Source: Haliotis rubra (Eukaryota). From it: DNA of 64,000 bases. The stretch lies in the NCBI RefSeq assembly GCF_003918875.1, contig NW_025767547.1, positions 62,001 through 126,000 of the forward strand, given 5' to 3'. The translations under genes were made by a program, and so were the position numbers. A model generated the notes under the pieces. The model made no database searches, was not told the DNA's origin, and saw nothing but the letters and a program-made list of their open reading frames with translations. Shown here one piece after another: positions 331-35,126 of this stretch. Position 1 is the first letter of the stretch, and each line of letters begins with the position of its first letter.

Positions 331-3074
331 TTACGAATATTGGTCGGTGACTCTAGAAAACAGGATTTCCATGGATCTGACCAAGATGTACATGAACTCT
401 CTGTCCTTCCAACGCACCGTGCTCATCATATTCCGGACGTTAGGCAGGAAGAAATGGGGCACCGTCATCTCGCCAGTCAACATTTTCTTGAACTTGCCCA
501 GACAGAAGTGTAACCTATGTTCCTGAGTTTCATCCTCCCACACATGGAACCCGGCGCTGAGGTCGTACAACAACGTCCACATCAACGTCCTGATGTGGTA
601 AGTTGTGAAACATAACCGAAATGAGGCATCCCTCAAGTAATGTTGTTTGGTGTGTTCAGCGACTTGCTGGATCATCTGTGATTTTCCTGTGACCGTGAGG
701 CCCTGTTGGCCCTTGGCAATCTCCATCACTCGTTTCATTGTTCGGAGGATAGGCTTCCAGCTGTCTTTGTTCCCGTGCAAAGTGAGTTTGTTCTCAGCGA
801 GGGAGAACGACATCTGCCACTGATTGTCTGCATGGTGTGCTGAAAGAAATATGAGCAATTTAGTATTTGAACCGATGTTGTGATATTATGCAAAGAAGAA
901 GATTCGATAGACATTACCCACTTGGCATTTTCAAATGAAGTCGTACTTAGGAATAACTGAGAAGACCCTACCTGGACAGCACTTTGTTGTAATGTTGAAT
1001 CCTTTTTCCTTGATGTCAGAAAGGTTGATGAAATGGGATATTTCCTTGAGATTTTCGCATTTGCTTAGATCCCGAGCAGTCGAAGACGGTGGCCACTGTG
1101 GTATGTTGATTGCTGGGACGATGTCCACGTCGATGTCAAGGGTGCCGTGGAAGGTTGTGGTGCCGGTGTAGGTGATGCCGAATGATGGGGAGTTTTGGTG
1201 TTTTAGGTTCCCTGTGAGAAAGAAATGTCATCTATACCACTAAAGTGAAGGAACCACTTAGGCAAGGAACGACAGAGGTGATGACACAGTTTTCATGAAC
1301 GTGTATTTCCATCATTACCAAGCCTTTATAATTACTGAAACACTGATCAGTAGGTCTTGTGGTTTGGGATGCATCACCCCTTGGGGTGAAAACATCATAA
1401 CACATACCACATCTTCTTCTTACTCTTACTCAACTGAGTAAATCGATTCTCATGTTGATCACTAGATTGTCCAGACTTGATTATTTACAGACCGCCGACA
1501 TATAACTGAATTATTGCGGAGTGCAAAGTTAAACACGAAATAAACACACTTACTCTTACACCTGCGATTTCTGCGCACAAATTCGCCCATCAGGTCAAAG
1601 AAATACTGCCTATACTCCCCAGGGTTGAGGAAGCTATCTTTGCACAGACTGTTAAGAGCTGAAGACGTATTTTCAACTCTGACCTTGCAGTAGCCAGGAT
1701 AACAGTCCCTATACACTGGCTGAAGAGGTGAATCAACTTCCGGAATGAATAAACAATCCATTTCATTGGGTCGAGACACCTTAAACAAGAAAACTGGAGG
1801 CTGAGCAGTGCACCTACAGGTAAACATGATTATGAAAGATCTTTCTGTAAACTGTGAGATATTTCTATTTGGCTAACACTTTGATCTTAAGTGTGGTGGT
1901 GCTTCTATAATCCTCTGAGAAAATATTACGACATGTATCAGTAACATGTGCTTATCATATGTTGTCGCAATTCACACTTAATCTACTGCAACTATGATTT
2001 CAGTGAACACACGAGATGTGAGTTGTTATACCTTCAGTGTCCATATGCTGGTGTAGAATGTTTGTGTAATACTAAGTACTTTGATGAAAAGATATTGCTG
2101 AGTGTGGCGTTAAACAACAAACAAACTAAACAGCAACGAACACTCACCTTAGTTCTGTCGTAATATGAACCTCCCCGAAACACGGTCCACGTCCAAGGCG
2201 TCTTCGATTTGAGAAAGGTACAGATATCGTTCTGCAACTCTGTAAAAATCGGTGCCACATCCCCGATTTCATTTTGTTTCAGTGTCACCTCATATTTGAA
2301 GAACTTCAAAATATCACTCCTTGGATTCTTTGAATGTTTCAGTGTTTTAGTACTGACCATGTGCTCAATAAAATCTTCCATCTTTGCCACGACATCTCCA
2401 CGCATCACGTTTGAATGGGGCATGTGTTGTCCGGTAGTTGGGTTACCGGATCTTAAGGGTGTGGTATTCACACATGGAGACATTCTTGGGCGACTTCTAC
2501 CATCACATTTGTTGTGGTTACTCAAATCCACAAACCACTTGTTGTCATCATTTGTCCTTTGCCTTACAGACTGGTGTCTACCATGACATATCTTGTGTTC
2601 ACCTAAATCCACAAACCACTTGTTGCAGTCACGACATTGTTGTTTGTCATCATTTGTCCTTTGCCTTACAGACTGGTGTCTACCATGACATATCTTGTGT
2701 TCACCTAAATCCACAAACCACTTGTTGCAGTCACGACATTGTTGTTTGTCATCATTTGTCCTTTGCCTTACAGACTGGTGTCTACCATGACATATCTTGT
2801 GTTCACCTAAATCCACAAACCACTTGTTGCAGTCACGACATTGTTGTTTGTCATCATTTGTCCTTTGCCTTACAGACTGGTGTCTACCATGACATATCTT
2901 GTGTTCACCCAAATCCACAAACCACTTGTTGCAGTCACGACATTGTTGTTTGTCATCATTTGTCCTTTGCCTCACAGACTGTTCTCTACCATGACATATC
3001 TTGTGTTTACCTAAATCCACAAACCACTTGTTGCAGTCACGACATTGTCGCTTTCCGTCATTCTTCTTTGACAT
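331..3074 (-). CDS. cGLR: cGAS-like receptor A (Mab-21/CD-NTase) with N-terminal zinc-finger-like repeat array, ~633 aa
   Basis: Hand-spliced exons 3074-2148, 1779-1554, 1211-972, 839-331; all introns GT-AG, phases 0/1/1, frame open. Motifs GGSYYDRTK|VSRPNEMD, SPSFGITY..DIDVDIVPAI, WQMSFSLAENKL, WKPILRTMK, TTYHIRTL and PHFFLP match cGAS GSYYE..PNEFD, SVDI, WRLSFS..E, K..LK.MK, SSYHVKT and YFIP. Confidence 0.93.
2496..3047 (-). repeat. Coding 102-bp tandem repeat (34 aa, C-x2-C-x9-H-x2-C): 5 full units plus 1 truncated
   Basis: QCRDCNKWFVDLGEHKICHGRHQSVRQRTNDDKQ repeated; the last unit lacks KQQCRDC. Confidence 0.95.
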
Positions 3075-3258
3075 GGTTGGCTTGATTCGTTGTACAACAA
3101 TGCGTACTCAATATCTGCCGTATGGATCGGGGGTTAGTTTAGACACTGTTGACTGTGTAGATTCGCTCGGAAAAGAGGCAGTGGGTCTGAGATCCTAACC
3201 AACATAACACTGGGCGTTCACGGTTGAATAATTGTCTACGTTCGTTTCTTAAGGTTAC

Positions 3259-3420
3259 CTGTCCTGATGCATGACTTCACGTGTGATTCCGAGAATAGGT
3301 CACCGGCAACCCACGCAGGTCGAGCGAGGCGTTCCTTGGTTGGGGCGTGGTCGACTGTGTGCCATAGTAACCAACGTGGATTGTTGCTGACGTAACATCA
3401 CTGACAATGAAATTATTGAT
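3259..3420 (-). promoter_or_regulatory. Putative promoter / non-coding first exon of cGLR-A
   Basis: Minus-strand donor CAG|GTAACC at 3259/3258; STAT-type TTCCGAGAA at 3287-3295; GC box ggggcgtgg at ~3342; conserved in paralogous copies at ~5540-5660 and ~35490-35640. Confidence 0.4.
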
Positions 3421-4141
3421 TCAGTGAATCGACCAAGTCGGTTTGCTCATTACATGGTATCTTTGCTGTTTGTTATTGATTCATAAACACCAAGTCGTAT
3501 CATAAATGCACAGAAATGTCTTATAAAGTGTTTTATCGCACACATGTATTAACAACCACAAAAAACAATACGTCTTTCTCGTTTACAGTGAGTACTATCA
3601 CACTGTCAGAACGACTAGTTATAGTGAACTGTCGACATATGCAGATCCCTAGTTTCTCGTTTTCAGTACTCACAGGCGGAGTCGAGCTTGTTCTCCTGTC
3701 TGCCATTGACTGTGGTTGAACACTCTCACTGAAGTATTTCTCTCATTCATAACATTATACATTTAATGTCTGTCACGTGACACCGCAATGTTTGGGCGTA
3801 TTTTATGCTATCATGTTGCTCGCCAAGCATGATCTCCGCCGTCAGCAATAATACTAGCACATGCTACTGATCAATACATTACACCCCCACAAGGTCTTCG
3901 TGGGCTTTCTGTTGAGGCGGAAGAAGAGATGTACAGAGTCTTGGAACTCACAAAGGCTGAGGTCGGGTTGTACTTTCTTTTATACGTTCGCAGGAAATCC
4001 AATTTTCCAAGAACTGGTTTAACCAGGTCGCCTACGGGTGTAAACGACTTTAAATATTCATAATTATGTCAACGTCTGCAAAGGATACGGTTTTAACAAT
4101 ATAACATTAAGGCAGACCTTTAGATTACGCTGGGTTGAGGG

Positions 4142-4327
4142 NNNNNNNNNNNNNNNNNNNNNNNNNNNNNNNNNNNNNNNNNNNNNNNNNNNNNNNNNNN
4201 NNNNNNNNNNNNNNNNNNNNNNNNNNNNNNNNNNNNNNNNNNNNNNNNNNNNNNNNNNNNNNNNNNNNNNNNNNNNNNNNNNNNNNNNNNNNNNNNNNNN
4301 NNNNNNNNNNNNNNNNNNNNNNNNNNN
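4142..4327. other. Assembly gap (N run)
   Basis: Ns; the paralogous position in the C block (36410-36530) holds a (GCGT)n microsatellite. Confidence 0.99.
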
Positions 4328-4329
4328 GA

Positions 4330-5100
4330 TCCCAAAAACATAATCTCTAGCCCCATGTGTAGTGTAATTAAGAACGGTTTCGTCAGGTACTATTGTACTA
4401 GCAGAACGAGAACGCTTGCAAAGAGGTTGTTGTTATGGGACTTTTTACCAGTAACTGACATGATTCCAACAGCATCAACAGCATCAATACCGACCTTTGA
4501 CAACGTCGTAGCTGCCGTGGCACGGACACAGTGGTTTGTGTACGTTTGAAATAAACCCGCTATTTTGGAGATTGTTGACATCATTTTTTCAGAGTATTGT
4601 TTCCCATGCGTTGCTGGGAATAGCAATAATCTGGCACAGGGTTGGATAAAGGACAATGAACGAAAGACGTATTTAACGGATTTCTTTTTTCAAGGTACAG
4701 TGGATGTTTAGACTTTTCTCGACTTTCCACCTCATGACGTGTTTTGCCGGACTCACTGTAAGTCATGTGAAACCTTTCAGCCCCAGCATCATCAGGGGAC
4801 AAAACAAAGGAATCATGGCGCAGATCCCAAGACCTACAGTACCACGATGGTCAAACTGAAGGGCTACCTGGAACCACACTTTCCTGACCAAACTAAGGGG
4901 GAGAGTGATGCCACTTCAATTCATATTTCTTAATCTCCCTGTGAAATGGCATCCTGGTGGCGTGTTACGTCTTCGCCAGCTCGTTTAAATTTTGGACACT
5001 TCCAATGAAAACATGGTTTGATGTCATAAATTCTTTAAACAGATGGAAGTCATAGCAGACATTTAATTTTGTCCTGACTTCTTCTCAGAATGGAATTTAG
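4330..5100 (-). mobile_element. Degenerate Crypton-type tyrosine recombinase (DUF3504-like) relic, copy 1
   Basis: Fragments YTNHCVRATAATTLSKVG..IMSVTG and SPDDAGAERFHMTYSES; frameshifted. Confidence 0.7.
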
Positions 5101-5184
5101 TTTTTTAACTGGTTGCATCTCATAATCTTTGCAATTGGGATACGATGACATGTGTTGCATCTTACGACAAACGTGTTGCCGAAG

Positions 5185-5355: not shown

Positions 5356-5399
5356 CGCGTTGGAAATCTTGAGGTCTGATGCCCCGGTTGCCCAGATAT

Positions 5400-6112: not shown

Positions 6113-8178
6113 CTAGTATGCTACTGACATACTAGCATATGCTACAGACATACTAACATATGCTACAGACATACAAGCATATGCTACTGACATACTAGCA
6201 TATGCTACAGACATACTAACATATGCTACAGACATACTAGCATATGCTACTGACATACAAGCATATGCTACAGACATACTAACATATGCTACAGACATAC
6301 AAGCATATGCTACTGGCATACTAACATATGCTACAGACATACTAGCATATGCTACTGACATACAAGCATATGCTACAGACATACTAACATATCCTACAGA
6401 CATACAAGCATATGCTACTGACATACTAGCATATGCTACGAACATACTAGCATATGCTACAGACATACAAGCATATGCTACAGACATACAAGCATATGCT
6501 ACTGACATACTAACATATGCTACAGACATACTAGCATATGCTACTGACATACAAGCATATGCTACAGACATACTAGCATATGCTACTGACATACAAGCAT
6601 ATGCTACAGACATACTAACTGACATACATGCTACTGACATACTAGCATATGCTACTGACATACTAGCATATGCTACTGACATACTAGCATATGCTACTGA
6701 CATACTAGCATATGCTACAGACATACTAGCATATGCTACAGACATACTAGCATATGCTACAGACATACTAGCATATGCTACAGACATACTAGCATATGCT
6801 ACAGACATACTAGCATATGCTGACATACACAGACATACTAGCATATGCTACAGACATACTAGCATATGCTACTGACATACTAGCATATGCTACAGACATA
6901 CTAGCATATGACATACTAGACATACATATGCTACAGACATACAAGCATATGCTACTAGGCATATGACATACTAACATATGCTACTGACATACTAAGCATA
7001 TGCTACTACAGACATACTAACATATGCTACAGACATACAAGCATATGCTACTGACATACAAGCATATGATACAGACATACTAACATATGTTACAGACATA
7101 CTAGCATATGCTACAGACATACTAGCATATGCTACTGACATACAAGCATATGTTACAGACATACTAGCATATGCTACAGACATACTAACATATGCTACAG
7201 ACATAAGCATATGCTACAGACATACAAGCATATGCTACAGACATACTAGCATATGCTACTGACATACAAGCATATGCTACTGGCATAAAAGCATATGTTA
7301 CAGACATACTAGCATATGCTACAGACATACTAGCATATGCTACAGACATACTAGCATATGCTACTGACATACTAACATATGCTACTAACATACAAGCATA
7401 TGCTACTGACAAACAAGCATATGCTCCTGACATACTAGCATATGCTACTAGACATACAAGCATATGCTACTGACATAGTAGCATATGCTACTGACATACT
7501 AGCATATGCTACTGACATACTAGCATATGCTACTGACATACTAGCATATGCTGCTACTGACATACTAGCATATGCTACTAGCATATGCTACAGACATACA
7601 AGCATATGCTACTGACATAGTAGCATATGCTACTGACATACTAGCATATGCTACTGACATACTAGCATATGCTACTGACATACTAGCATATGCTACTGAC
7701 ATACAAGCATATGCTACTGACATACTAGCATATGCTACTGACATACAAGCATATGCTACTAGACATACAAGCATATGCTACTGACATACTAGCATATGCT
7801 ACTGACTAGCATATGCTACATAATGCTACTGACATGCTACTAACATAGCATAAGCTACTGACATACTAGCATATGCTACTGACATACAAGCATATGCTAC
7901 AGACATACTAGCTTATGTTACTGACATACAAGCATATGCTATTGACATACAAGCATATGCTACTGACATACTAGCATATGCTACTGACATACTAGCGTAT
8001 TTTACTGACATACTAGCGTATTTTACTGACATACTAGCATATGCTTCTGACATACTAGCACATGCGACTGATATACAGGCATATGCTACTGACATACAAG
8101 CATATGCTACTGACATACTAGCATTTGCTGCTGACATACTAGCATATGCTACTGACATACAAGCATACTGACATACTG
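6113..8178. repeat. 21-bp minisatellite (catactagcatatgctactga), ~95-100 units
   Basis: Direct tandem repeat containing the palindrome TAGCATATGCTA. Confidence 0.97.
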
Positions 8179-9050: not shown

Positions 9051-9974
9051 TTGAACCAGGTACATTTCAAAATCTACGCAATTAGGATACGACGACATGT
9101 GTTGCCTCTTACTACATGCATGGGTTGCTGAAGACAGTCCTACCTGGATCTTAAGTATCAATAACCGCTCTCGCTCGGGGAATACAAAATTTCACACTCG
9201 TTTCATATAAGTCGTATGACACACTTGCCCGTGTAATAATCTGTATTTATGTAGCACCTGTGCACTTGTGCATGCTCAAGTCGCTAATACCCCGGTTATC
9301 ACAAGCTGTCTGTAAGGCGGAAGAAGGCTATCAGTCATATGTCTTATCCATTAACCCATTCAGTGCTGAGTGAACAGAGGCAATTTTCAACAAACTCACA
9401 GTTGCCTGAGGTGAGGCTACATATGTCACGTGGGCATCGTTGTGGGGCCCGACTGAAGTCCTGAAACTCTCAGGAGTCAACCTAACATACACGGTGACCC
9501 ATTCAAGGACTTTCCCTGACAAACGTTGCTTGCCCTAGTCTCTATGCACAAGAGCACACACCACTACAAATATCAAGTAAATGATTGTAAGATTTAAATT
9601 GCGCTACAAAAAACATAGAACGTATACAGCTTTGTGGTTTAGCACAGTACTATTGCCTTCATCTAAATGCGAAAACACCCACCCGTATAAAGTTCGCAGA
9701 GAGTATTTCAGCTAAACGAAAATTTCTCAGCGAAATAAATACCTTTCAACAGCGTTTATGGTTGCTTGGGTAGACATGGAGATACTGACGGAAATCATGA
9801 TGAGCCAGGGACCGTTGGAAAACCAGAAATGGCACCAACTGTACCAATGTGGGGACTCGAACCCCATTTTCGTCGTGACGAGCTCGAGACAATACCCCAC
9901 CGCCATTCACGAAACATACGGCACAAACGCCACAGAACACCCATTCTCGATCTCTACAAGATTCAGTTAGACCT

Positions 9975-10349
9975 GAAAGGCAAAAATGTTGAAAGAATCC
10001 ATGAAATCCGATGATATGGTGTTCTCTGAAAGGCAAATATGATGAAAGGATCCATCAAATCCGATGATATGGTGTTGTCTCTCTGATGATGAATGGATCC
10101 ATGAAATCCGATGATATGGTGTTCTCTGAAAGGCAAATATGATGAATGGATCCATGAAATCCGATGATATGGTGTTCTCTGAAAGGCAAATATGATGAAT
10201 GGATCCATGAAATCCGATGATATGGTGTTCTCTGAAAGGCAAATATGATGAATGGATCCATGAAATCCGATGATATGGTGTTCTCTGAAAGGCAAATATG
10301 ATGAATGGATCCATGAAATCCGATGATGTGGTGTTCTCTGAAAGGCAAA
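9975..10349. repeat. 53-bp tandem repeat, ~7 units
   Basis: atgaaatccgatgatatggtgttctctgaaaggcaaatatgatgaatggatcc repeated. Confidence 0.95.
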
Positions 10350-10957
10350 CATGTCCTGTCCAACCGATAGCGCTGGCAAATTCACAAAATGTGCTCAAAA
10401 TTTATATTAAAAAAGCTATCTTCTGATAAAGCCTGTTATTTCTTTTTTTTTTCTCAGAGATTATGGGTGATAACAAATGGTCTTTTCTGGAAGTTTTGTA
10501 AGGTTGTTTTAGGAACTGGTTCAAAGGCGACAATGTTAGGAGAACGTGTCACTTTAGTATACATGTTGATACTCTCGACAGGTCTGTGAAATATAGATAG
10601 ACATCCCTGACTGTGTTAAGATAATGCAATCGGGAGAAAAACACGAGCTATATATCAAAATCATTGGTCATGGTATTGTATAGAATATGAAGGTATAGGA
10701 GAGACTGTATGGTTCTTATCGGTATGAATTTATCGGCAGAATAAAAAAATGTATACAAAAGTCTTGAGTTTTCAGGTGCTGTAAAATAGAAATATTCGAC
10801 GTTAAAAGGTCCTTGACATAAAAGCAATTCTTGTCCCGGTGACTTTTAAAGAAAATAAACACATGCTCACTTTATTAAAGTGATCTGGAAATTATGCTTG
10901 GTGTAAGGGGAGAACGAGCATTGATAAGACACTTTTGTTCATTACAGACGCCATGTC

Positions 10958-21574: not shown

Positions 21575-21975
21575 ACACGAATCAGCCAACAATAACAGCA
21601 TCACGTGCCCATATAATGAAAGGGAGAAGCAAACCTAATTCAAAACAAGGCTTTTCAAAACGTGATGGCACAAATATCCGTTTATCATCGGATAATGTCA
21701 AACGTCCCAAGGTGAAATATCCTCCCCGGTCTAAGGACGGCAAACATGGACTTTCGCCGTCAAAGGACACGAAACAGCCAACAATAACAGCATCACGTGC
21801 CCATACAAAGAAAGGGAGAAGCAAACCTAATTCAAAACAAGTCTTTTCAAAACGTGATGGCACAAATTTCCTTTTATCACCGGATAATGTCAAATTTCCT
21901 AAGGTGAAATATCCTCCGCGGTCTAAGGACGGCAAACACGGACCATCGCCGTCAAAAGACACGAAACAGCCACCA
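21575..21975 (+). repeat. 192-bp (64-aa) K/R/S/P-rich coding tandem repeat, ~2 units
   Basis: KGRSKPNSKQ..KVKYPPRSKDGKH..PSKDTKQP starts at 21619 and again at 21811. Confidence 0.9.
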
Positions 21976-24900
21976 ACACCAAGTCTAAGTCTCGGGACAA
22001 AGAACAGGGCCCCAAAGGCCTCTCCACTCACAGACGACAAAACACCAATGAAGGACCAAGGTAGGACAACGTGGCATAGGCGAACTAAGTCTAAGCCTGT
22101 TGCTAAGTCAAATGCTCATCAGTCTGAGAAAAATGTTGAGGGTTCACCAACAAGGTCATCAAAGAAGGCAGAGAACGGTGAGCATGAAACTGCAGGCGAT
22201 TTAACAACAAAGGAATATGATGGAGAAACATTTTCAAACTCAGACGTGAACCTTAAAATTTCGATCGTAAAAGATTCAGTTCTCTGTATTTTTTTCAAAC
22301 CCGTTGGTTCATTTTGGAGGATAATAGTTTTCTTCCAAAAAATGATCATACTTTGCCTGTCAAAATTAACTTTTCAACCTTTTCCCGACACAAAACGAAT
22401 GAAATGTCCTGACATGATGAGATCCTCTGCCCATAAGCCTGCTAGACCAGTATCTACTGTAGGCGTGAAGCAGGATTCGGGGAAGGCGGCAAGAGATTCT
22501 GACAAAAGAAAATCATGCCATTCACAGAGTGAACAGAAAGGCTATATTGTGGACATAGCGGAGATGGATGCACTGATTACTGAGATGGTAAATAAACAGA
22601 TCATTCGGAGCTCTGACAATCCAAAAAGGGACATCAAGAACTTCTTTCAAAAAGAAGTGAAAATGAAAAAGAAGGATATCGACGTAGCGTTGGGGCATTT
22701 TAGGTGGTTGAGAGAAAAGATAATGCGATTATTAAACAGTGAGATGAACCTTGGAAAATGGACTTTTTGCAATGCAGGGTCTCACTTCGATGGAACTAAG
22801 GTAGGAACGGAATTAACAAAAGCAAAAGGTTTCCTTCATGAGGTTATAACAAACGTAGTTTGGGTTGTATTGAGGATGCAAGGCTGACTATTTTAAGGGT
22901 AATGCTATTTTTGAGGGCATTATCATTTGCAGAAGCCCGAGGTCTTCCATTAACTGCCCCGACAATGGAGGGCAGTTGAAAAAGACCGAGGGCTTCTGCA
23001 AATGATAATGCCCTCAAAAATAGCATTACCGTAGTTATTATTACTAAAATACATGGAATTTGTGTTGAAAAGAAAAAGGAAACAATGAAGGAATTTGACT
23101 GTAAGTTTACCCAAATCAACTTCTGACGGGGTTGACTGCCCGAATGCAATTACGTCATCGAACAATTCAAGTGACGTCACAACAGAAAGTGACGATATTC
23201 GACTTTGGCCTTTGACAAGACCATAGCCTGCAACATGTCAAACTATGTCAGTGTTCGGTTTTGGTCCATCAACAGCCTTAATAGTGCAATGGTTAAGGTT
23301 CGCACCAACAAGAAAGCCAATTTACCGCTATTTAAAGCGGGAATTCGGGTTGCTTTGACTTGTTTGACCCAGAATATCAACAACAGAACTGATCGTGGCC
23401 CGTCGTTAAGGTTGAGCGGTCCAATATCATTTGCAGCGGCCCACAAATTTCTGATAATGGGAGGGCCGTTTCATGATAATTCCATGTATTTTAGCTATAA
23501 GTTCTTTTCTAAGATGCCTAGCGGTTAGAACAAGCGAAAAAAAAATACATTATCAGACAATAAAGGTATAGTTTTTTGATGACGTAACAATTGAATGACG
23601 TTATCCCGTCACTGCGCCATTCTAGTGTGCCCTCTCGTAATCGAACCATTTTACATTACGTCACAATGTAAGCGACGCCACGATGCATGTCAGTTGTCAT
23701 CGACTCGTACGGCCTCCTACAGTAAACTTCACCGTTGCATCCCCTTTCTTGGTTTGCAGTTGCTTCACGCAGCTAACATCACTGGTGGAAACATTACGTT
23801 TATGTTTTACGACGGTTAAAATGTGTCAATTCGACTCACAAGTTTTCAGCGACACGGTAACGTTCGCAATGCTTACATTCCCACAATGCAATCTTGGAAA
23901 GTCGCTTGACTACTCAGCTTCATCTGGATGTACTGATCTAAACTTACGTTGGTAGTAGAAATGCGACGTTCGTATTGCCCCATATGGTTTGATGTAATTA
24001 AAATAATTCAGAGGAGATATTTAATCCGAACGTAAACCGTCATCAAACTGTTATCATTTGTTTTTTTCTGTTAACGTTCGTCTTAACGTAGGGGGGCAGA
24101 CACATCAATAGAACAGCGCGCCAGTTAGCCCTGTGCGAAGATTCTTAGGAATTTAGGCCACCGACACCTTCGTTTGTTTTCTGCCTTAAATTAATCGTAA
24201 TTGTCCTTAGAAAGTATTACATTTGGCATCTTAGAAAAGAACTACAGTTCGCTCTACCACCATGTATAGTGTAATAAAGCACACTTTCGCCCTGAACTAT
24301 TATAACGTATTTATAAAAGCACTCGGATGCAAGCGTCCTCGTACTTTAGCTATAATAGTTCAGGGCGAAAGTGTGTTTTATTACACTATTCATGGTGGTA
24401 GAGCGAACTGTATTTCTTAAATAATAATAATATATTTAAAACGTTAATGATATCTATAACTTTAGATTTGAATACTGCTAGAGTCAGTCAGGTGTATAAG
24501 CCTCTTCCTTTCTCAGGTGGCCCGACCAAATGAATTTGACTGCACAATCTTCCCAGTTCTTAAGACCAAAATTGTGGCTGAGTTTGATGACACCTGTAAA
24601 GCTGGGGCCTGCAAGGTGAAGGTCGTCGGTGATGTGCATGACCACGAGAAGGATCTCCAGCTATTCCTTGATGGAAGCTATGTAAACTCAAAAAGGTTCA
24701 AGGCATACGTCTTTGAGAAGCTTGAACGTGTTCTTCAAACTGATAGAAAGTTAAAGGGTTCGTTGATTTAATTCACTTGTTCAAATTTTATAATGTCCCT
24801 GAATGATATGAACGTTTGAATAGACACATTGTAAACCACACCCAGTATCAAATGAGATACTTGACATATTCAATGCCACCAGGCGGAAATTTAAACAACA

Positions 24901-27531
24901 ACAGATCTGTTTCGTTTCAGATGCTCGCAAATTTTCGTCTACCCAATCTTTCGCGGTGAGCTATGGGGGTATTCCAACTGAAGAAGGGATGAAAAGTATT
25001 GACATTGACTTTGTGCCGTCACTGAACATCAAACACTGGCTTTCAAAGAGCATTTCCCGTGACATCAAGAAAGTCATCCCGGACAAGAGTAAAGCTACAG
25101 TCGTTCAGGAAAAGGGATTCAACGTAACTGCGAAGCACTGGTGTCATGGTTAGTAATGATTGATTGATGGTTTGATTGTTGTTTAACGCCGCACTCAGCA
25201 ATATCCCAGCTATATGGCGCCAGCCGATAAATAATCCAGTCTAGACCAGACAATCCAGTTATCAACATCATAACCTGGGTGCCGTTCCACTAACCTATCT
25301 TAGCCCTATGCCAATCGTAAACCCCTAAAATCCCAATCTTAGCGTGACGATCGGCATACCGTTCCACTAACCGATCTTAGCCTTATGCCAATCGTAAACC
25401 CCTAAAATCCCAATCTTAGCGTGACGTTACGATCGGCATACCGTTCCACTAACCAATCTTACCCAAGTCAATCGTAAAGTTAAGATTCAAAGTCTAAGTT
25501 GCTCATGGCCAATTTAGGATAACTAAAATCAATCGTAGAGAAACCAAAATGGTGGCTTTCCTATTCCATGTGAAAAATAAGAGCGAGCATTTCACCGTGA
25601 GCGTCCCCTAAAATCCCCCATGAAATGAATTTGTATATTTCTGTGATGTAAACAAACACTGCACTGCCTTACAAATGTCAGGCCAGTCTGACCACTGTTG
25701 TCATGGGAACACAACCGAGCGAGTCGGTGTAACACATTGTACAACAATATTGCATGGTTAAGAATAGGGACAGCCGTGAAGTGAACAATGTTCTAAAACA
25801 AAAAGATGAAAATATGTTTGATTTCACGTGCACTTATTTGGTGGGGGGATTCTAAAGGCAGGCCGCGTGTTATTCAAGACCACTGACAGATTCTGCGTAC
25901 GTTATAGAGGATGCCTCCTCACGCCTTGTTTATTCTGATTGACAAGGTTCAGGCACATATTAAAAGCTCTGACACAATTGACATTTTTAAAGTCCAGACT
26001 GAAACCTGTTTTCAGTATATTACTTATAATCTCGGCTGTAAATACTCTCGTGTAAATTATCTGTACATAGCGCTTTGAGCATGCCCCAGGATGTAGAATA
26101 GGCTCACTATAAATATGCATTTATTATTATTATATTATGCCTGATACCCAGCGTTCACACGCACTTGCACCTGAAACCAAGGTGCTCACTACCCTAATAT
26201 TTTGCTCTAGGTTTTTTTCTTTACGTTTACACATGGCTGGAAAAATACCCATGAAGGACCGGGTTAGAATAATGAACTTCAATAACCCATGCTTGTCGTA
26301 AGAGGCCACTAACGGGATCGGGTGGTCAGGCTCGCTGACTTGGTTGACACATGTCATCGGTTCCCAACTGCGCAGATCGATGCTCATGCTGTTGATCACT
26401 GGATTGTCTGGTCCAGACTCGATTATTTATAGTGATCGTAAGACCGGCTACGATCGGCCTAAGATCGGGTAGTGGAACGGGTGTAACTTTAAGCTAAGAC
26501 GATTGTAAAATTGGCGTAACTTGCTAAGATTGATATTAGGTAAGATCGGTTAGTGGAACAGCACCCTGAGCAAAAAGGGATACAATAACGTGTGGCGACA
26601 ACGTCAGCGAGTCTGACCACCCAATCCCGTTAGTCGCCTCTTACGACAAGGATATGTTGCTGAAGGCTATAATTCTAACCCGGATCTTCACGGGTCAGGC
26701 AAACAATGAAATATATATGCGAGCTATAAATATATTGATGGCTCTGAGAAGTGAGACACCTATGATTTGAATTCTTGAAACACTGAGTATACATAAATGT
26801 GTACACACGAAAAGACAAGAAAGATAACCAACCCATCTAATTCAGATGTATGTGAATATATCGAGGATTCGAATAGGAGATTCATCCTCAGTATATTCTT
26901 TGGTCAACATCAGAACTGTTCATGCTCACTTTAGGGTTTCTTTCTGTAAAGATCAACCGTTGAACTGTTTGTTTTGGTAAGCAAATGTACAAATCTGATA
27001 AATTCCTTATTTATCCTTCTTTTTTGAAAAGCCAAAAATCCTGACCTCCTGTGGCAAGTTTCCTGTTCCTATGCTGAGAAGACCATCACCAAATATGCCG
27101 ATAAAGTCTCTTGGAAACCGTCACTTAGGACATTGAAAAGAGTTTTGGAAATTGCGAAAGGCAACAGTGATTCCTGTGCCAAGAGTAACAGCCCAGAGCT
27201 CTTGCAGATCCAAAAAGCAGTGAGGTATGTCCAGAAGCAGAGGCCAGAACTGCGTTCTTCACTGCTGACAACGTATCACATCAGAACCTTGATGTGGTGG
27301 CAGCTGTATGAACTGACATTAGGGGAGCACGTGTGGGGGACAGAAACAATGGCCACAAGATTCCAGGAATGTCTCCGGAAGTTCCAGAAGATGATGACAG
27401 GGGAAATGGTTGTGCCGCACTTCTTCCTTCCCCAGATCAAGAACATTTTACCGCATAAGCTAGGAAAGGAAAGGGAATTCCTCTATGTTATAGCAAGGGC
27501 AACTGAGGTAATATTCAGCAAGAAGCAGTGA
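21616..27531 (+). CDS. cGLR: cGAS-like receptor B (Mab-21/CD-NTase) with basic disordered N-terminus, ~717 aa
   Basis: Exons 21616-22800, 24517-24757, 24921-25148, 27032-27531; GT-AG introns at the same positions and phases as in A and C. Motifs NAGSHFDGTK|VARPNEFD, SIDIDFVPSL, WQVSCSYAEK, WKPSLRTLK, TTYHIRTL, PHFFLP. The start codon is uncertain. Confidence 0.88.
22898..23495. mobile_element. Foldback non-autonomous element in cGLR-B intron 1
   Basis: Perfect 41-bp inverted arms spanning 22898-23030, plus the inverted pair ctaaaatacatggaatt / aattccatgtattttag. Confidence 0.65.
24243..24412. mobile_element. Palindromic MITE-like element
   Basis: ~60-bp inverted arms: tacagttcgctctaccaccatg..gccctgaactattata and its reverse complement. 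Confidence 0.65.
25277..26566. mobile_element. Non-autonomous PIF/Harbinger-like DNA transposon nested in a family 2 element
   Basis: TIRs gggtgccgttccactaacc / ggttagtggaacagcaccc with CTG at both junctions and subterminal repeats; the host element resumes at 26568. Confidence 0.75.
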
Positions 27532-27680
27532 CTCCCAAAACTGGACAAACATTTAAACCATTGGTCAGTCAAGGATACGTACTTATCAGTCCTTGGGGCA
27601 GTGAAGGATGTCGATGCAAGTAAAACAGTCGTGTGATGCTGATACTGTACATTGTCCTCATCTGTCTTATTACAGTTGAG

Positions 27681-28690: not shown

Positions 28691-29289
28691 TGCCCTGTAT
28701 CGTAGTACGATACAAGTATGGTCAGCCTGCAGTATCCAGCATGCACCTCAACCACAATGTTAAACTTCCGTGGCCAACCGGCCATATACTCTAAGGTTAA
28801 TTAAGGTTAATTACACGCAGGCAGCTGATCTGTACATGGCTGTGCTGATGGTCATAATAATAAGCTGCTGATATTTCATGTATATTGTCAGCACTGTGAT
28901 CTAGACTTAGGTAACACAACTTTAACTTAACTCAGAGAATATACAAACATGTCTATATTCCCGGGTAAACCCATACCCCATCAAAGTGCCTACGACACAT
29001 GTCGTACTCTAACCCAAAGGGGGAGAAATTTGTCAAAATTATTTGCCCTTCCAACATTTGGCCTGCCTCTAAAATCAGAAGATTGGCGGCGGTCTGTAAA
29101 TAATCGATCTAGACCAGACAATCCAGTGATCAACATCAGGAGCATTGATCTATGTAATTGGGAACCGATGATATGTGTCAACCAAATCAGCGAGCCTGAC
29201 CACACGATCCGGTTAGTTGCCTCTTACGACAAGCATGGTTTTGCTGAAACCCAATTCTAACCCGGATCTTCACGGGTATCTGACTATTG

Positions 29290-29700
29290 GGAAGCTGAAG
29301 TCATCCCTGTACAGTCTGGTGGATAGTGGTTTGTCAAACTTAGACTATTTAAAGAAAGGTTCCACAATAAATGGTACATATTACGCTGATGAATTACGTA
29401 GGCTGCGTCATCAGATCAGAGAAAAGCGCCAAGGTGTCTGGCTCCTCCAAGACAATGGTGCAGTTCATACGGCCCAAGTGGCAGTGAATGCTGCACAGGA
29501 CTGTGGCTTGGAGATCCTCCCTCACCCAGCCTATTCTCAAGATCTTGCCCCTTCTGAGTTCTTCCTCTTCCCTCAACTCAAATCTGTCCTTTGAGACGGA
29601 TGAGGAGGTCATCACGGATGATGAGTTTTTAGGGTCACGTGACAAACAATGGCTTTCGGGCGGGTTAAGTGATGTTCATCGCATCCAGGACGTGTGGCAA
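29290..29700 (+). mobile_element. Mariner transposase relic
   Basis: DYLKKGSTINGTYYADELRRL..LLQDNGAVH..LPHPAYSQDLAPSEFFLFPQLK corresponds to the mariner DNA..H and YSPDLAP motifs. Confidence 0.9.
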
Positions 29701-30901: not shown

Positions 30902-31083
30902 GGGGCCTTGTGGTAGACTAGTGGTTAAAGCATTCGCTTGTCGCGCCGAACACCGAACGCGCCGAACACCCGGGTTCGAGTCCCTTCATGGGTACAATGT
31001 CTGAAGCCCATTTCTGGTGTCCCCAGTCACGATATTGCTGGAATGTTGCTAAAAGTCGGGTAAAACTGAACTCACTCACTCAG
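30902..31083 (+). mobile_element. tRNA-derived SINE, family 1, abutting the cGLR-C stop codon
   Basis: Full-length head; same position relative to the gene as the SINE next to cGLR-A. Confidence 0.85.
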
Positions 31084-31089
31084 TTATGT

Positions 31090-34000
31090 TTACGAATATT
31101 GGTCGGTGACTCTAGAAAACAGGATTTCCGTGGATCTGACCAAAATGTACATGAACTCTCTGTCCTTCCAACGCACAGTGCTCATCATATCCCGGACGTT
31201 AGGCAAGAAGAAATGGGGCACCGTCATCTCGCCAGTCAACATTTTCTTGAACTTGCCCAGACAGAAGTGTAACCTATGTTCCTGAGTTTCATCCTTCCAC
31301 ACATGGAACCCGGCGCTGAGGTCGTACAACAACGTCCACATCAACGTCCTTATGTGGTAAGTTGTGAAACCTAACCGAAATGAGGCATCCCTCAAGTAAT
31401 GTTGTTTGGTGTGTTCGGCGACTTGCTGGATCATCTCTGATTTTACTGTGTCCATGAGGCCCTGTTGGCCCTTGGCAATCTCCATCACTCGTTTTATTGT
31501 TCGGAGGATAGGCTTCCAGCTGTCTTTGTTCCCGTGCAAAGTGAGTTTCTGCTCAGCGAGGGAGAACGACATCTGCCACTGCAGATTGTGTGGATTGTGT
31601 GCTGAAAGAAATACAAGCAATTTAGTATTGGAACCAATGTTGGGATATTATGCAAAGAAGAAGATTCGATAGACATTACCCACATATTCAAATGAAGTGG
31701 TACTTAAGAATGACTCAGAAGACCCTACCTGGACAGCACTTTGTTGTAATGTTGAATCCTTTTTCCTTGATGTCAGAAGGGTTGATGAGATGGGATATGT
31801 CCTTGAGATTTTCACATTTGCTCAGATCCCGAGCAGTCGGAGACGGTGGCCATTGTGGTATGTTGATAGCTGGGACGATGTCCATGTCGATGTCAAGGGT
31901 GCCATGGTAGGTTTTTGGGCCGAAGTAGGTGATGCCGAATGATGGGGAGTTTGGGTGGTTTAGGTTCCCTGTGAGAAAGAAATGTCATCTATACCACCAA
32001 AATGAAGGAACCACTTGGGCAAGGAACGACAGAGGTGATGACACAGTTTTCATGAACGTGTATTTCAATCATTACCAAGCCTTTATAATTACTGAAACAC
32101 TGATCAGTAGGTCTTGTGGATTGGGATGCATCACCCCTTGGGGTGAAAACATCATAACACATACCACATCTTCTTCTTACTTTTACTCAACTGAGTAAAT
32201 CGATTCTCATGATGTTGATCACTAGATTGTCTGATCCAGACTTGATTATTTACAGACCACCGCCATATAACTGAAGTATTGCGGAGTGCAAAGTTAAACA
32301 AGAAAGAAACAAACTTACTCTTACACCTGGGACTTCCGCGCACAAATTCGTCCATCCGGTCAAAGAAATACTGCCTATACTCCCCAGGGTTGAGGAAGCT
32401 GTCTTTGCACAGACTGTTAAGAGCTGAAGACGTATTTTCAACTCTGACCTTGCAGTAGCCAGGATAGCAGTCCCTATACACTGGCTGAAGAGGTGAATCA
32501 ACTTCCGGAATGAATAAACAATCCATTTCATTGGGTCGAGACACCTTAAACAAGAAAACTGGAGGCTGAGCAGTGCACCTACAGGTAAACATGATTATGA
32601 AAGATCTTTCTGTAAACTGTGAGATATTTCTCTTTGGCTAACACTTTGATCTTAAGTGTGGTGCTTCTATAACCCTGTGAGGAAATATCATGCATCAGTA
32701 ATACGTGCTTATCATATGTTGTAGCAATTCGCTCTTAATCTACTGCAAATATAATTTCAGTGAACACACGAGATGTAAGTTGTAATGCCTTCAGTGTCCA
32801 TTTGTTGGTGTAGAATGTTTGTGTATTACTACGTACTTTAATAATAATATAATAATGGCATATTTGTAACGCGCATATATCCATGCTTATGCATGCTAAA
32901 AGCGCACAAATAAAAATGTAAGTAAGGCAAAGAGCTACAGTTCAAAGGCTATCTTGAACATGTGTGTTTTCAGATTGGATTTAAAGGCATGAAAGTCACA
33001 ACAGTCTCTGAAACTCTGTGGGAGACTGTTCCAGGCTATTGATCCTGCATGGACAAAGGACCTGTTTCCATACAGCACTGTCTTCACTTTGGGAAGAACA
33101 AGCAAGTTCTTATCCTGTGAGCGGAGAGATCGGGAAGGTGTGTACACGGTTAGATGATTGGATAGACAGGAAGGCGCAGTTCCAGTGAAAACAAGGCATA
33201 AGAGTTTAAACTTGATCCGGAACTCGACTGGAAGCCAGTGGAGAGTGTACAGTATAGGAGTAATGTGTTCATATTTTCCAGAGCGAGTCACGATGCGGGC
33301 GGCGACGTTCTGCACTCTCTGTAGCTTGGCTATCTGGGTCTTTGATGCGTCGGCCAGTAAACAGTTACAATAATCAAGCTTACTCATTAAAAGTGACAAT
33401 ACAAGAGTCTTGGCAGATTCAACTGTAAGACATTGGCGAATATGTCCAATTTTGCGGAGTGGCGCTTCTTTGGACCAAACAGAATGCATTCTGTCTTGTT
33501 GCTGTTGAGCTTAAGTTTGTTGTGGGTCATCCATGATATAGCGTCATCACAGCAGTAACTCATGTCACTTTGATGAAAAGATATTGCTGAGTGTGGCGTT
33601 AAACAACAAACAAACAAACAAACAAACAACAAAACAGACAAACAAACTAAACAGCAACGAACACTCACCTTAGTTTTGTCGTAATATGAACCTCCCCTAA
33701 ACACCTTCCACGTCCAAGGCGTCTTCGATTTGAGAAAGGTACAGATATCGTTCTGCAACTCTGTAAAATATGGTGCCACATCCACGATTTCAGTTTGTTT
33801 CAGTGCCACATCATCGTTGAAGAAATTCAAAATATCACTCCTTGGATTCCTTGAATGTTCCAGTTTGCAAGTACTTACCATGTGCCCAACAAACTCTTCC
33901 ATCTTTGTCACGACATCTCTATCCATCTCGTTTGAATGGGCAATATGTTGTCCGGTTGTTGGGTTACCGGATCCTAGGGGTGTGGAATTCACACATGGAG

Positions 34001-35126
34001 ACATTCTTGGGCGACTTCTACCATCACATTTCTTGTGGTTATTCAAATCCACAAACCACTTGTTGCAATCAGGACATTGTTGTTTGTCGTCCGGTGACCT
34101 TTGGCTGGCTGTTTGGCCCCTACCATCACATTTCTTGTGGTTATTCAAATCCACCAACCACTTGTTGCAGTCAGGACATTGTTGTTTGTCATCCGGTGAC
34201 CTTTGGCTGGCTCTTTGGCCCCTACCATCACATTTCTTGTGGTTATTCAAATCCACAAACCACTTGTTGCAATCAGGACATTGTTGTTTGCCATCCGGTG
34301 ACCTTTGGCTGGCTCTTTGGCCCCTACCATCACATTTCTTGTGGTTATTCAAATCCACAAACCACTTGTTGCAATCGGGACATTGTTGTTTGCCATCCGG
34401 TGACCTTTGGCTGGCTGTTTGGCCCCTACCATCACATTTCTTGTGGTTATTCAAATCCACAAACCACTTGTTGCAGTCGGGACATTGTTGTTTGTCATCC
34501 GGTGACCTTTGGCTGGCTCTTTGGCCTCTACCATCACATTTCTTGTGGTTATTCAAATCCACAAACCACTTGTTGCAGTCGGGACATTGTTGTTTGTCAT
34601 CCGGTGACCTTTGGCTGGCTGTTTGGCCCCTACCATTACATTTCTTGTGGTTATTCAAATCCACAAACCACTTGTTGCAATCAGGACATTGTTGTTTGTC
34701 ATCCGGTGACCTTTGGCTGGCTGTTTGGCCCCTACCATTACATTTCTTGTGGTTATTCAAATCCACAAACCACTTGTTGCAGTCGGGACATTGTTGTTTG
34801 TCATCCGGTGACCTTTGGCTGGCTCTTTGGCCTCTACCATCACATTTCTTGTGGTTATTCAAATCCACAAACCACTTGTTGCAGTCGGGACATTGTTGTT
34901 TGTCATCCGGTGACCTTTGGCTGGCTGTTTGGCCTCTACCATCACATTTCTTGTGGTTATTCAAATCCACAAACCACTTGTTGCAATCAGGACATTGAAG
35001 CTTGTCATCCGGTGACCTTTGGCTGGCTGTTTGGCCCCTACCATCACATTTCTTGTGGTTATTCAAATCCACAAACCACTTGTTGCAGTCAGGACATTGT
35101 CGCTTTCCGTCATTCTTCTTTGACAT
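31090..35126 (-). CDS. cGLR: cGAS-like receptor C with an 11-unit zinc-finger-like array, ~811 aa
   Basis: Exons 35126-33669, 32544-32319, 31968-31729, 31601-31090; GT-AG introns, frame open. Motifs GGSYYDKTK|VSRPNEMD..DIDMDIVPAI..WQMSFSLAEQKL..TTYHIRTL..PHFFLP. Close paralog of A. Confidence 0.93.
32840..33571 (-). mobile_element. 5'-truncated L2/CR1-group LINE in cGLR-C intron 1
   Basis: NKLKLNSNKTECILFG..SKLDYCNCLL..KLQRVQNVAARIV..HITPILYTLHWLPV; (ATT)n tail; acttt duplicated at the junctions; empty site in cGLR-A intron 1. Confidence 0.9.
34017..35099 (-). repeat. Coding 102-bp tandem repeat (34 aa, C-x2-C-x9-H-x2-C), 11 units
   Basis: QCPDCNKWFVDLNNHKKCDGRGQTASQRSPDDKQ repeated. Exon 1 is 177 aa (5x34+7) longer than in A. 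Confidence 0.95.

What the first reader, a model, noticed from the sequence alone, without database searches (positions are those of the whole stretch)
331..35126. Cluster of three cGAS-like receptors with a shared enzyme core and swapped N-terminal sensor modules
Seen: three genes have the same four-coding-exon layout. The phase-0 intron splits the active site at GSxxDxTK|VxRPNExD in each, and the E-x-D..D triad is intact. Their N-termini differ: 5+1 zinc-finger-like units in A, a basic disordered region in B, and 11 units in C. None has the H-C-C-C zinc thumb that vertebrate cGAS carries after WRLSFS..E. Established: animal cGLRs (Mab-21/CD-NTase fold) make cyclic dinucleotides for STING when they bind dsDNA or dsRNA, and the family is expanded in molluscs. 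Inference: this is an innate-immune locus in which exon 1 acts as an exchangeable ligand-sensing cassette on a common nucleotidyltransferase.
Basis: partly seen in the sequence, partly recalled or inferred. Interest (0 to 1): 0.9.

Follow-up and report, generated by a model that had tools for sequence, protein, structure and literature searches.

The report
Abalone cGAS-like receptors with zinc-finger arrays
Three intact genes for cGAS-like innate-immune enzymes sit together in the blacklip abalone genome. Two of them carry 5 or 11 tandem copies of a small zinc-finger unit in front of the enzyme, an unstudied variant of a known receptor family rather than a new kind of system.

Summary
The window is Haliotis rubra, contig QXJH01000820.1. 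It has three Mab-21/cGLR genes with the same four coding exons and intron phases 0/1/1. The first intron falls after GSxxDxTK, and the GS and E-x-D...D catalytic residues are intact.

- **Gene models.** C equals NCBI XP_046552478 and B equals XP_046552484. B's exon 3 starts at 24921. A is not annotated on its own, but RNA contigs from four runs show it spliced as modelled.
- **Fold.** The predicted core (pLDDT 91.7) matches oyster Cv-cGLR1 (8GJW) best, then cGAS. There is no zinc thumb.
- **Gap.** The gap at 4142-4327 lies about 1 kb upstream of A's ATG, outside any coding exon.

Exon 1 also encodes about 110 residues of the enzyme core, so it is not a separable cassette. A and C are young duplicates (dS about 0.07) that differ by expansion of a 102-bp unit. 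One to several N-terminal fingers occur in most clades of the sampled molluscan relatives, and Cg-cGLR1 also has N-terminal fingers. The four-exon layout is shared with a bivalve. What the fingers bind is unknown.

A published survey found no STING in H. rubra. I rate this a new variant of a known kind, of moderate interest.

The parts
2148..3074 (-). Gene A exon 1: ATG, finger array, linker, and the first part of the NTase core up to GSYYDRTK
   Evidence: Model. RNA contigs are at least 99% identical over 2148-2571 and carry the A letter at 45 of 47 A/C diagnostic sites.
2496..3047 (-). Gene A finger array: 5 complete 34-aa C-x2-C-x9-H-x2-C units plus one unit lacking the CxxC half
   Evidence: TRF: period 102, 5.0 copies, 98% matches at 2542-3048.
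1554..1779 (-). Gene A exon 2, starting VSRPNEMD (catalytic E315, D317)
   Evidence: Joints 2148|1779 and 1554|1211 appear in RNA contigs of 4 runs, with GT..AG on the - strand.
972..1211 (-). Gene A exon 3, with catalytic D414 in IDVDIVP
   Evidence: The contig across the exon 2/3 joint has 0 differences from A over 18 A/C diagnostic sites.
331..839 (-). Gene A exon 4: WQMSFSLAE and the C-terminal helix bundle, ending in the stop codon
   Evidence: The RNA joint to exon 3 sits at the same position, but with variant 20-nt starts and an A/C-mosaic exon 4.
4142..4327 (.). Assembly gap in the 5' flank of gene A, outside all coding exons
   Evidence: Its flanks are colinear with the upstream region of C.
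3165..4141 (-). Upstream flank of A, duplicated upstream of C (35399-36411) at 91.5% identity
21616..22800 (+). Gene B exon 1: basic low-complexity N-terminus (a 192-bp unit x2.1 at 21574-21976) plus the first part of the core up to GSHFDGTK
   Evidence: The product equals XP_046552484 (LOC124262090 isoform X3).
24517..24757 (+). Gene B exon 2, starting VARPNEFD
24921..25148 (+). Gene B exon 3 (corrected start), with catalytic D505
27032..27531 (+). Gene B exon 4: Mab-21_C helix bundle and the stop codon
   Evidence: Pfam Mab-21_C, E = 1.2e-9.
33669..35126 (-). Gene C exon 1: ATG, 11-unit finger array, linker, and the first part of the core up to GSYYDKTK
   Evidence: The product equals XP_046552478.
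34018..35100 (-). Gene C finger array: 11 complete units
   Evidence: TRF: period 102, 10.6 copies, 96% matches.
32319..32544 (-). Gene C exon 2
31729..31968 (-). Gene C exon 3
31090..31601 (-). Gene C exon 4 and the stop codon

Best explanation
This is a cluster of three cGAS-like receptor (cGLR) genes of the molluscan cGLR clade in Haliotis rubra.

A and C are young, same-strand duplicates about 30 kb apart. B is an older paralogue on the other strand between them. Each encodes a complete Mab-21/CD-NTase enzyme that most likely makes a cyclic (di)nucleotide signal once a bound ligand orders its GS activation loop.

In front of the enzyme, A and C carry a beads-on-a-string array of a 34-aa mini C2HC zinc finger (5 intact units and 11 units) joined by disordered polar linkers. 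B carries a strongly basic disordered tail instead.

The N-terminal differences did not arise by exon exchange. They arose by tandem expansion, homogenisation and loss of a finger that recurs across the sampled molluscan relatives and is probably ancestral to them. All of this happened inside an exon that also encodes the start of the core.

My working model is that the N-termini are multivalent tethers. They would raise avidity for a polymeric ligand and so set the activation threshold, as the basic N-terminus of human cGAS does for DNA. I put long double-stranded nucleic acid first at about 45%, and a protein or ubiquitin-type polymer at about 30%.

Shown: gene structures, splicing of A, catalytic motifs, fold, duplication history, and the distribution of fingers among relatives.

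Inferred: enzymatic activity, zinc binding, what the fingers bind, and the downstream receptor.
For: - **Family.** Pfam Mab-21 scores E = 4.9e-14 on the C-type protein, and Mab-21_C hits B. phmmer against PDB gives 8GJW Cv-cGLR1 at E = 3.6e-28, followed by cGAS.
- **Fold.** The AF2 core model has pLDDT 91.7 and pTM 0.90. The Foldseek top hit is 8GJW (E = 9.3e-21, TM 0.85 by target), followed by dozens of cGAS chains.
- **Catalytic residues.** The GS pair and the second acid (D95) are invariant and the other two acids nearly so across 32 relatives. They are present in A, B and C.
- **Expression.** Four RNA runs show all three A introns removed at the modelled GT..AG sites, on A-type sequence. 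B and C equal NCBI models.
- **History.** A and C are sisters, next to a single H. rufescens orthologue with 7 fingers. B groups with orthologues carrying 1 or 0 fingers. Nucella (1-3) and Potamilus (3-5) relatives also have fingers.
- **Divergence.** A versus C gives dS of about 0.07-0.09 outside the array. Units are 96-98% alike within an array but 79% alike between arrays.
- **Finger motif.** The C, C and C ligands are invariant and H is at least 90% conserved across 26 diverse units.
- **Layout.** The same four-exon layout and the same intron after GS..TK occur in the bivalve Potamilus.
- **Precedent.** The characterised dsDNA sensor Cg-cGLR1 (UniProt P0DXB9) has N-terminal zinc fingers, and a Mytilus coruscus homologue has a long C2H2 array.
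- **Charge.** B's core has pI 9.5 and its tail pI 10.3. A's core has pI 8.9 and C's 8.4. Li et al. report pI above 8.5 for nucleic-acid-sensing cGLRs (PMC9980059).
Against: - No biochemical data exist for any of the three proteins.
- The finger matches no Pfam zinc-finger family at the level of a single domain. Only the CPxCgKxF knuckle half aligns to C2H2, C2HC_2 or UBZ profiles.
- The AF2 model of three units has low confidence (pLDDT 57) and predicts only short hairpins.
- Each unit is nearly neutral in charge (net +1 to +2), which is weak for a nucleic-acid binder.
- The array consensus shows dN/dS of about 0.5 with both rates raised. That does not demonstrate selection on binding specificity.
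- Outside the array, omega between A and C is 0.6-1.2 on few substitutions, so relaxed constraint on one copy cannot be excluded.
- STING was reported absent from H. rubra protein sets (PMC11103948), so the canonical output pathway is in doubt.
- The residue before GS is G or A rather than Q/T, and the spacer to the third acid is 96-101 residues rather than 50-90 as in the published motif. Cv-cGLR1 itself has S before GS.
- Array copy numbers come from an assembly of a 102-bp tandem repeat and may be imprecise.
Confidence: 0.7

Rival explanations
1. Exon 1 is a modular, exchangeable ligand-sensing cassette that has been swapped between paralogues sharing a common enzyme.
For: The N-termini differ sharply while exons 2-4 of A and C are 92-97% identical. 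The intron after GS..TK is at the same place in all three genes.
Against: - Exon 1 also encodes about 110 core residues, and that part diverges in step with the rest: about 31-35% identity between B and A/C, and dS of 0.09 between A and C.
- A and C carry the same unit, expanded to different copy numbers.
- Fingers occur in most clades of the sampled relatives, and B's H. asinina orthologue keeps one.
- No chimeric history appears in the tree.
Confidence: 0.07
2. The finger arrays are not ligand sensors. They are protein-interaction, ubiquitin-binding or localisation modules that scaffold or restrain the enzyme.
For: - The units are nearly neutral in charge.
- There are weak partial matches to UBZ and C2HC_2 profiles.
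- Li et al. note protein-interaction domains (TPR, ankyrin, death domains) fused to some cGLRs (PMC9980059).
Against: No significant single-domain match to any ubiquitin-binding finger was found. The dsDNA-activated oyster Cg-cGLR1 also carries N-terminal fingers, and the best profile matches are to DNA-binding classical fingers. Nothing here is decisive either way.
Confidence: 0.3
3. The arrays are functionally neutral repeat expansions, and one duplicate (A, with fewer units and one broken unit) is drifting towards loss of function.
For: - Omega is 0.6-1.2 between A and C.
- A's sixth unit has lost its CxxC half.
- NCBI does not annotate A separately.
- Other first-stage notes, which I did not check, describe decayed cGLR copies elsewhere in this genome.
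Against: - A has an intact 633-codon frame with all catalytic residues, and it is transcribed and correctly spliced in four runs.
- All 16 complete units keep all four metal ligands.
- Fingers are retained across gastropods and bivalves.
Confidence: 0.13
4. A and C are two haplotypes of one gene, placed side by side by an assembly error.
For: The flanks are highly similar, and the contig has a gap next to A.
Against: - A and C lie on one contig, separated by 28 kb of unique sequence that includes gene B.
- Intron identity is only 92-96%, and there are large indels.
- The arrays are 79% identical.
- A-type transcripts, together with exon-4 sequence carrying many C-type letters, are found in the same RNA runs.
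Confidence: 0.03

Closest known systems
Oyster cGLR1 enzymes: Cv-cGLR1 (PDB 8GJW) and Cg-cGLR1 (UniProt P0DXB9). They are dsDNA-activated 2'3'-cUA synthases (Li et al. 2023, PMC9980059).
   Same: These are the best sequence and fold matches. They share the GS...E-x-D...D site, the WxxSFxxAE segment and the lack of a zinc thumb. Full-length Cg-cGLR1 also has N-terminal zinc fingers.
   Different: - Core identity is only about 24-37%.
- The oyster fingers are two longer C-x2-C-x12-H-x4-H (Di19/C2H2-like) units, not a homogeneous tandem array of 5-11 C-x2-C-x9-H-x2-C units.
- The residue aligned with the R of WRxSF is Q in A, B and C.
- Ligand and product are unknown here.
Vertebrate cGAS
   Same: Same fold (Foldseek E about 1e-15) and the same catalytic triad. 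It has a long N-terminal extension before the core, and B's basic disordered tail resembles the cGAS N-terminus in composition.
   Different: A, B and C have no H-C-C-C zinc thumb. Sequence similarity is very low (E about 0.03). A and C have finger arrays instead of a basic tail. They are not orthologues of cGAS.
Other molluscan cGLRs with N-terminal fingers: Haliotis rufescens, H. cracherodii and H. asinina, Nucella lapillus, Potamilus streckersoni, and Mytilus coruscus 'MB21D1'
   Same: Same architecture, with fingers followed by a Mab-21 core. The Potamilus gene has the same four-exon layout.
   Different: They have 0-7 fingers, against 11 in C. Unit sequence and the H-to-C spacing vary (x1 to x3). 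The KWFVDL-type unit is confined to the Haliotis orthogroup.
Classical C2H2 and C2HC zinc fingers (Pfam zf-C2H2, zf-C2HC_2, zf_UBZ)
   Same: They share the CPxCgKxF knuckle and the L-x2-H motif. The profile of the units aligns best to designed and consensus C2H2 fingers.
   Different: There are three fewer residues between F and L, and the last ligand is Cys only 2 residues after His. No single-domain match is significant. The fold prediction was inconclusive.

Membership tests
cGLR (criteria of Li et al. 2023, PMC9980059) | Active-site motif: G[S/G] activation loop, [DE]h[DE]h, and a third [DE] about 50-90 residues on | tested here: met
   GS, E-x-D and the third D are present in A, B and C, and the GS pair and second acid are invariant, the other two acids nearly so, in 32 relatives. 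There are two loose fits: the residue before GS is G or A (not Q/T), and the spacer is 96-101 residues.
cGLR (criteria of Li et al. 2023, PMC9980059) | Homology across both the NTase core and the C-terminal helix bundle | tested here: met
   Pfam Mab-21 hits the C-type protein (E = 4.9e-14). Mab-21 and Mab-21_C both hit B. The Foldseek alignment to 8GJW spans 388 columns of the 412-residue model.
cGLR (criteria of Li et al. 2023, PMC9980059) | Predicted structural homology to known cGLR or CD-NTase enzymes | tested here: met
   The model has pLDDT 91.7. The top hit is 8GJW at E = 9.3e-21 with TM 0.72 (by query) and 0.85 (by target), followed by cGAS. Only C's core was modelled.
cGLR (functional definition) | [quoted passage not shown] | not testable with these tools
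   This needs recombinant protein assays.
cGLR-STING pathway | A STING receptor encoded in the same genome | not tested
   No STING sequence was available as a tool reference to use as a query. PMC11103948 reports STING absent from H. rubra protein sets. An unchecked first-stage note claims decayed TIR-STING modules elsewhere in the genome.
Vertebrate-type cGAS | H-x5-CC-x6-C zinc thumb between the WRLSFS..E segment and the next helix | tested here: not met
   Only about 8 residues lie there, with no Cys (LHGNKDSW in A and C). The model shows a 6-residue loop.
Classical C2H2 zinc finger | C-x2-4-C-x12-H-x3-5-H spacing and a significant profile match | tested here: not met
   The spacing is C-x2-C-x9-H-x2-C. 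Pfam and PDB profile matches cover only the knuckle half, and no single stretch is significant.
Pfam zf-C2HC_2 / zf_UBZ | Domain-level profile match | tested here: inconclusive
   Summed partial matches appear in some relatives (E = 8e-10 for P0035), but with 0 qualifying stretches. The Haliotis units are not among them.

The most novel reading that the evidence does not exclude
The tandem mini-finger array is a tunable multivalent 'ruler'. Its copy number (5 versus 11) and unit sequence would set which polymeric ligand, and what length of it, switches the cGLR on. These expressed, intact cGLRs would signal in an abalone lineage that lacks canonical STING, which implies an unknown receptor for the nucleotide product.
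Probability: 0.12. Interest if true: 0.8.

Novelty: new variant of a known kind. Interest (0 to 1): 0.5.

Why it matters
cGLRs are a major family of animal pattern-recognition receptors. What their N-terminal extensions do is largely unexplored outside human cGAS.

This locus offers a natural comparison. Two enzymes about 93% identical beyond the finger array differ in having 5 or 11 copies of a small finger, and they sit next to a paralogue with a basic tail. That makes the contribution of N-terminal valency to ligand binding and activation directly testable.

Fingers also precede the characterised oyster dsDNA sensor and many other molluscan cGLRs. Neither 'zinc' nor 'finger' appears in the text or held supplements of the family-defining paper.

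H. rubra is a farmed species hit by abalone herpesvirus, and it was reported to lack STING. Where these enzymes signal therefore has practical as well as evolutionary interest.

Tried and rejected
- **B's exon 3 start.** My first model started it at 24846 and gave 742 aa. I rejected it because 24921 has a proper polypyrimidine tract and reproduces the NCBI protein exactly.
- **Pfam on single exons.** It gave only noisy summed zinc-finger hits and weak Mab-21 hits. Full-length references were needed.
- **Look-ups that found nothing.** The look-up of encoding contigs found no record for isoform X2 or for the Nucella protein.
- **Word-based homologue searches.** Both the exon-1 core part and the array found only the Haliotis orthogroup. 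The exhaustive representative search was needed to see the wider family.
- **AF2 on three finger units.** It gave pLDDT 57, so I ran no fold search on that model.
- **ESM Atlas look-up of the array.** It returned only generic C2H2-like clusters below the tool's reliability threshold.
- **Positive selection on the arrays.** Not supported. Both dS (0.41) and dN (0.21) are raised, which fits an older or faster-mutating array or gene conversion of the flanks.
- **The 10 kb beyond the window start.** It holds no further cGLR exon and no finger motif.
- **Literature searches.** Searches for cGLR with C2H2, zinc finger, abalone or gastropod found nothing on this architecture.
- **STING in this genome.** I could not test for it, because no STING sequence was available as a tool reference.


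Full report
**Where this is.** The window is Haliotis rubra (blacklip abalone), assembly GCA_003918875.1, contig QXJH01000820.1, record positions 62001-126000.

**Observation.** A six-frame motif scan found GS..D.TK and RPNE.D three times: twice on the - strand near 2.1 kb and 33.7 kb, and once on the + strand near 22.8 kb. A tblastn of the three products against the window found no fourth copy.

Hand-built GT-AG models give complete frames:
- A (- strand): 3074-2148, 1779-1554, 1211-972, 839-331; 633 aa.
- B (+ strand): 21616-22800, 24517-24757, 24921-25148, 27032-27531; 717 aa.
- C (- strand): 35126-33669, 32544-32319, 31968-31729, 31601-31090; 811 aa.

C is letter-for-letter NCBI XP_046552478 (LOC124262089 isoform X1). 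B is XP_046552484 (LOC124262090 isoform X3). Intron phases are 0, 1, 1 in all three genes, and intron 1 falls exactly after GSxxDxTK.

**The gap.** The N run at 4142-4327 lies 1.07 kb upstream of A's start codon, and no modelled exon touches it. The sequence on each side is colinear with the paralogous flank of C: 4141 aligns to 36411, and 4328-4608 aligns to 36531-36801. The two sides are therefore consistent with being continuous, and nothing in this report depends on it. I did not look up or fill the missing letters.

**Transcription of A.** NCBI does not annotate A as a gene. It folds A's exons 3-4 into isoform X2 of the C locus, across 31 kb and across gene B.

I laid Logan contigs of four RNA runs on 250-2600 at 97% likeness or better. 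All four runs show joints at 2148|1779 and 1554|1211, with GT..AG on the - strand. They also show a joint from 972 into exon 4.

Over the non-repeat part of exon 1 there are 47 sites where A and C differ, and the contigs carry the A letter at 45. The contig across the exon 2/3 joint is identical to A over 18 such sites. One contig runs from the core part of exon 1 into the last finger units (to 2571). So A is an expressed gene, spliced as modelled, and its fingers are on the same RNA as the core.

The exon 3/4 joint carries two variant 20-nt starts. The one long exon-4 contig is an A/C mosaic with private changes. This could be an allele, a conversion tract, another paralogue or a chimeric contig.

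B and C were not tested with reads. They rest on the NCBI models.

**What the proteins are.**
- Pfam Mab-21 hits the C-type protein (E = 4.9e-14). Mab-21 and Mab-21_C both hit B.
- Against PDB sequences, the best match is 8GJW, the Crassostrea virginica cGLR1 (E = 3.6e-28). Another cGLR1 and cGAS follow.
- An AlphaFold2 model of C's core, built on 32 relatives, has pLDDT 91.7 and pTM 0.90.
- Foldseek puts 8GJW first (E = 9.3e-21, TM 0.85 by target), then mouse, human and pig cGAS.
- The GS pair and the second acid are invariant, the other two acids nearly so, in the family alignment. They are present in A, B and C.
- After W-Q-x-S-[FC]-S-x-A-E there are about eight residues and no cysteine before the next helix, so there is no zinc thumb.

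By the three sequence and structure criteria of Li et al. 2023 (PMC9980059), these are cGLRs. There are two loose fits: G or A before GS, and a 96-101-residue spacer.

**The N-termini.** C has 11 complete 34-aa units and A has 5. A also has a sixth unit that lost seven residues, including its CxxC. The DNA period is 102 bp.

Units are 96-98% identical within an array but 79% identical between arrays, differing at 11 of 34 residues. This indicates homogenisation within each array.

A profile of 26 diverse units from relatives keeps C, C and C invariant and H in at least 90%. Against PDB and Pfam, only the CPxCgKxF knuckle half aligns, best to classical C2H2 fingers, and no single stretch is significant. 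AlphaFold2 on three units was uninformative: pLDDT 57, hairpins at the CxxC, linkers below 50.

I therefore call it an unclassified C2HC mini-finger. It looks like a classical finger shortened by three residues between F and L, with Cys as the last ligand. Zinc binding is inferred from the ligand pattern alone.

B's first 310 residues are basic (pI 10.3, net +39) and contain a 192-bp unit repeated twice. They also contain an odd hydrophobic stretch near 22260-22360 that I could not explain.

**History.** An exhaustive search of 1.84 billion representatives found only 52 relatives by single-sequence search. The named ones are all molluscs: Haliotis species, Nucella, Potamilus, Magallana/Crassostrea, Saccostrea, Mytilus and Solemya.

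In a maximum-likelihood tree of 26 cores:
- A and C are sisters, next to a single H. rufescens orthologue with 7 fingers.
- B groups with H. asinina (1 finger) and H. cracherodii (0 fingers) proteins.
- Other Haliotis, Nucella and Potamilus clades have 1-5 fingers.

The Potamilus gene has the same four coding exons, with exon 1 ending after GSYSDETK. The layout and an N-terminal finger are therefore old features shared with these relatives.

Outside the array, A and C differ at dS of about 0.07-0.09. Omega is 1.2 (exon-1 core part) and 0.6 (exons 2-4), on few changes. In the array consensus, both dS (0.41) and dN (0.21) are raised. That points to a different mutational or conversion history, not to demonstrated positive selection.

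Duplicated DNA runs at least from A 210-4608 to C 30960-36801.

**Against the cassette idea.**
- Exon 1 contains the first ~110 residues of the enzyme core as well as the N-terminal module.
- A and C differ by copy number of one unit.
- B is an old paralogue throughout, including its exon-1 core part.

Nothing indicates exchange of exon 1.

**How it probably works.** By homology, ligand binding orders the GS loop and the enzyme cyclises NTPs. This follows established cGAS/cGLR knowledge and PMC9980059.

The N-termini most plausibly add multivalent binding to a polymeric ligand. Support for this is indirect:
- The closest characterised enzymes are dsDNA-activated (PMC9980059).
- Full-length Cg-cGLR1 (UniProt P0DXB9) itself starts with two zinc fingers, and a Mytilus homologue has a long C2H2 array.
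- Core pI values are 8.4-9.5.

Against it, the units are close to neutral in charge and match no known nucleic-acid-binding finger.

**Downstream.** Agius et al. 2024 (PMC11103948) found no STING in H. rubra, H. laevigata or H. midae protein sets, though it is present in H. rufescens and H. discus hannai. A first-stage note claims decayed TIR-STING modules elsewhere in this genome (unchecked). I could not test either claim. Where the signal goes is therefore the largest open point.

**Novelty.** cGLR radiations in molluscs, and cGLRs fused to other domains, are published. The proteins here are in NCBI as 'uncharacterized'. Searches of the text and held supplements of PMC9980059 for 'zinc' and 'finger', and library searches combining cGLR or cGAS-like receptor with C2H2, zinc finger, abalone or gastropod, found no description of this architecture. 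Finger-bearing cGLRs are nonetheless plainly present in public sequences. I rate it a new variant of a known kind, of moderate interest.

Noticed in passing
window 790-839 (start of A exon 4) and 31549-31601 (C): The loop just before WQMSFS is hypervariable. The reference A reads AHHADN and C reads AHNPHNL. RNA contigs show two further versions (AHHPHNL and VHHHGNL) joined to A-like exon 3. This suggests extra alleles or paralogues, or gene conversion.
   Followed up: partly
window 331-35126 (NCBI LOC124262089): NCBI isoform X2 joins C exons 1-2 to A exons 3-4 across 31 kb and across gene B. Isoform X3 lacks exactly one 34-aa unit, and a 102-nt GT..AG 'intron' can be drawn at AG|GT within the repeat. 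Both may be artefacts of paralogue similarity or of copy-number polymorphism.
   Followed up: partly
window 21616-27531, and upstream of the window start (L001): A 773-aa isoform of gene B is annotated with its 5' end more than 31 kb upstream, beyond the window start and beyond L001. The 9.7 kb I could read there has no cGLR exon and no finger motif.
   Followed up: partly
window 22260-22360: B's otherwise polar, basic exon 1 contains an in-frame hydrophobic stretch of about 35 residues (VLCIFFKPVGSFWRIIVFFQKMIILCL...). It could be a membrane-like segment or unspliced junk kept by the gene model.
   Followed up: no
window 1435-1513 and 2067-2145 (A introns); related copies near 20861, 32180-32300, 44290-44598 and 54104-54376: A short interspersed repeat (it translates as ...[19 protein letters not shown]) has very high RNA contig depth, and contigs run off into unrelated sequence. 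It is probably a SINE-like element transcribed elsewhere.
   Followed up: no
window 32851-33567 (C intron 1) and 29217-29591: C's intron 1 carries an insertion of about 700 bp that is absent from A, holding a 191-codon open frame with no Pfam match. Between B and C lies a mariner/DDE transposase fragment (Pfam Transposase_1, E = 2e-7).
   Followed up: partly
window 6117-8167, 9973-10353, 10957-14443, 47975-48321, 49721-50093, 51139-52874, 58019-60366, 60506-61356, 63337-64000: There are many long minisatellites with periods of 21-44 bp, up to 3.5 kb long. Two large ones lie between A and B.
   Followed up: no
window 39901-42730 (- strand): An F-box/LRR protein gene (315 aa in the NCBI annotation) lies 5 kb upstream of gene C. 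Pfam gives LRR_4 and Zer-1-like LRR hits.
   Followed up: partly
window 50203-54794 (+ strand): Exons of an amidase-signature (FAAH-like) gene (Pfam Amidase, E = 4e-30 at 54441-54794), with a 1.7-kb 31-bp minisatellite in an intron. A first-stage note places another cGLR between two FAAH paralogues 7.5 kb beyond the window end. I did not check that.
   Followed up: partly
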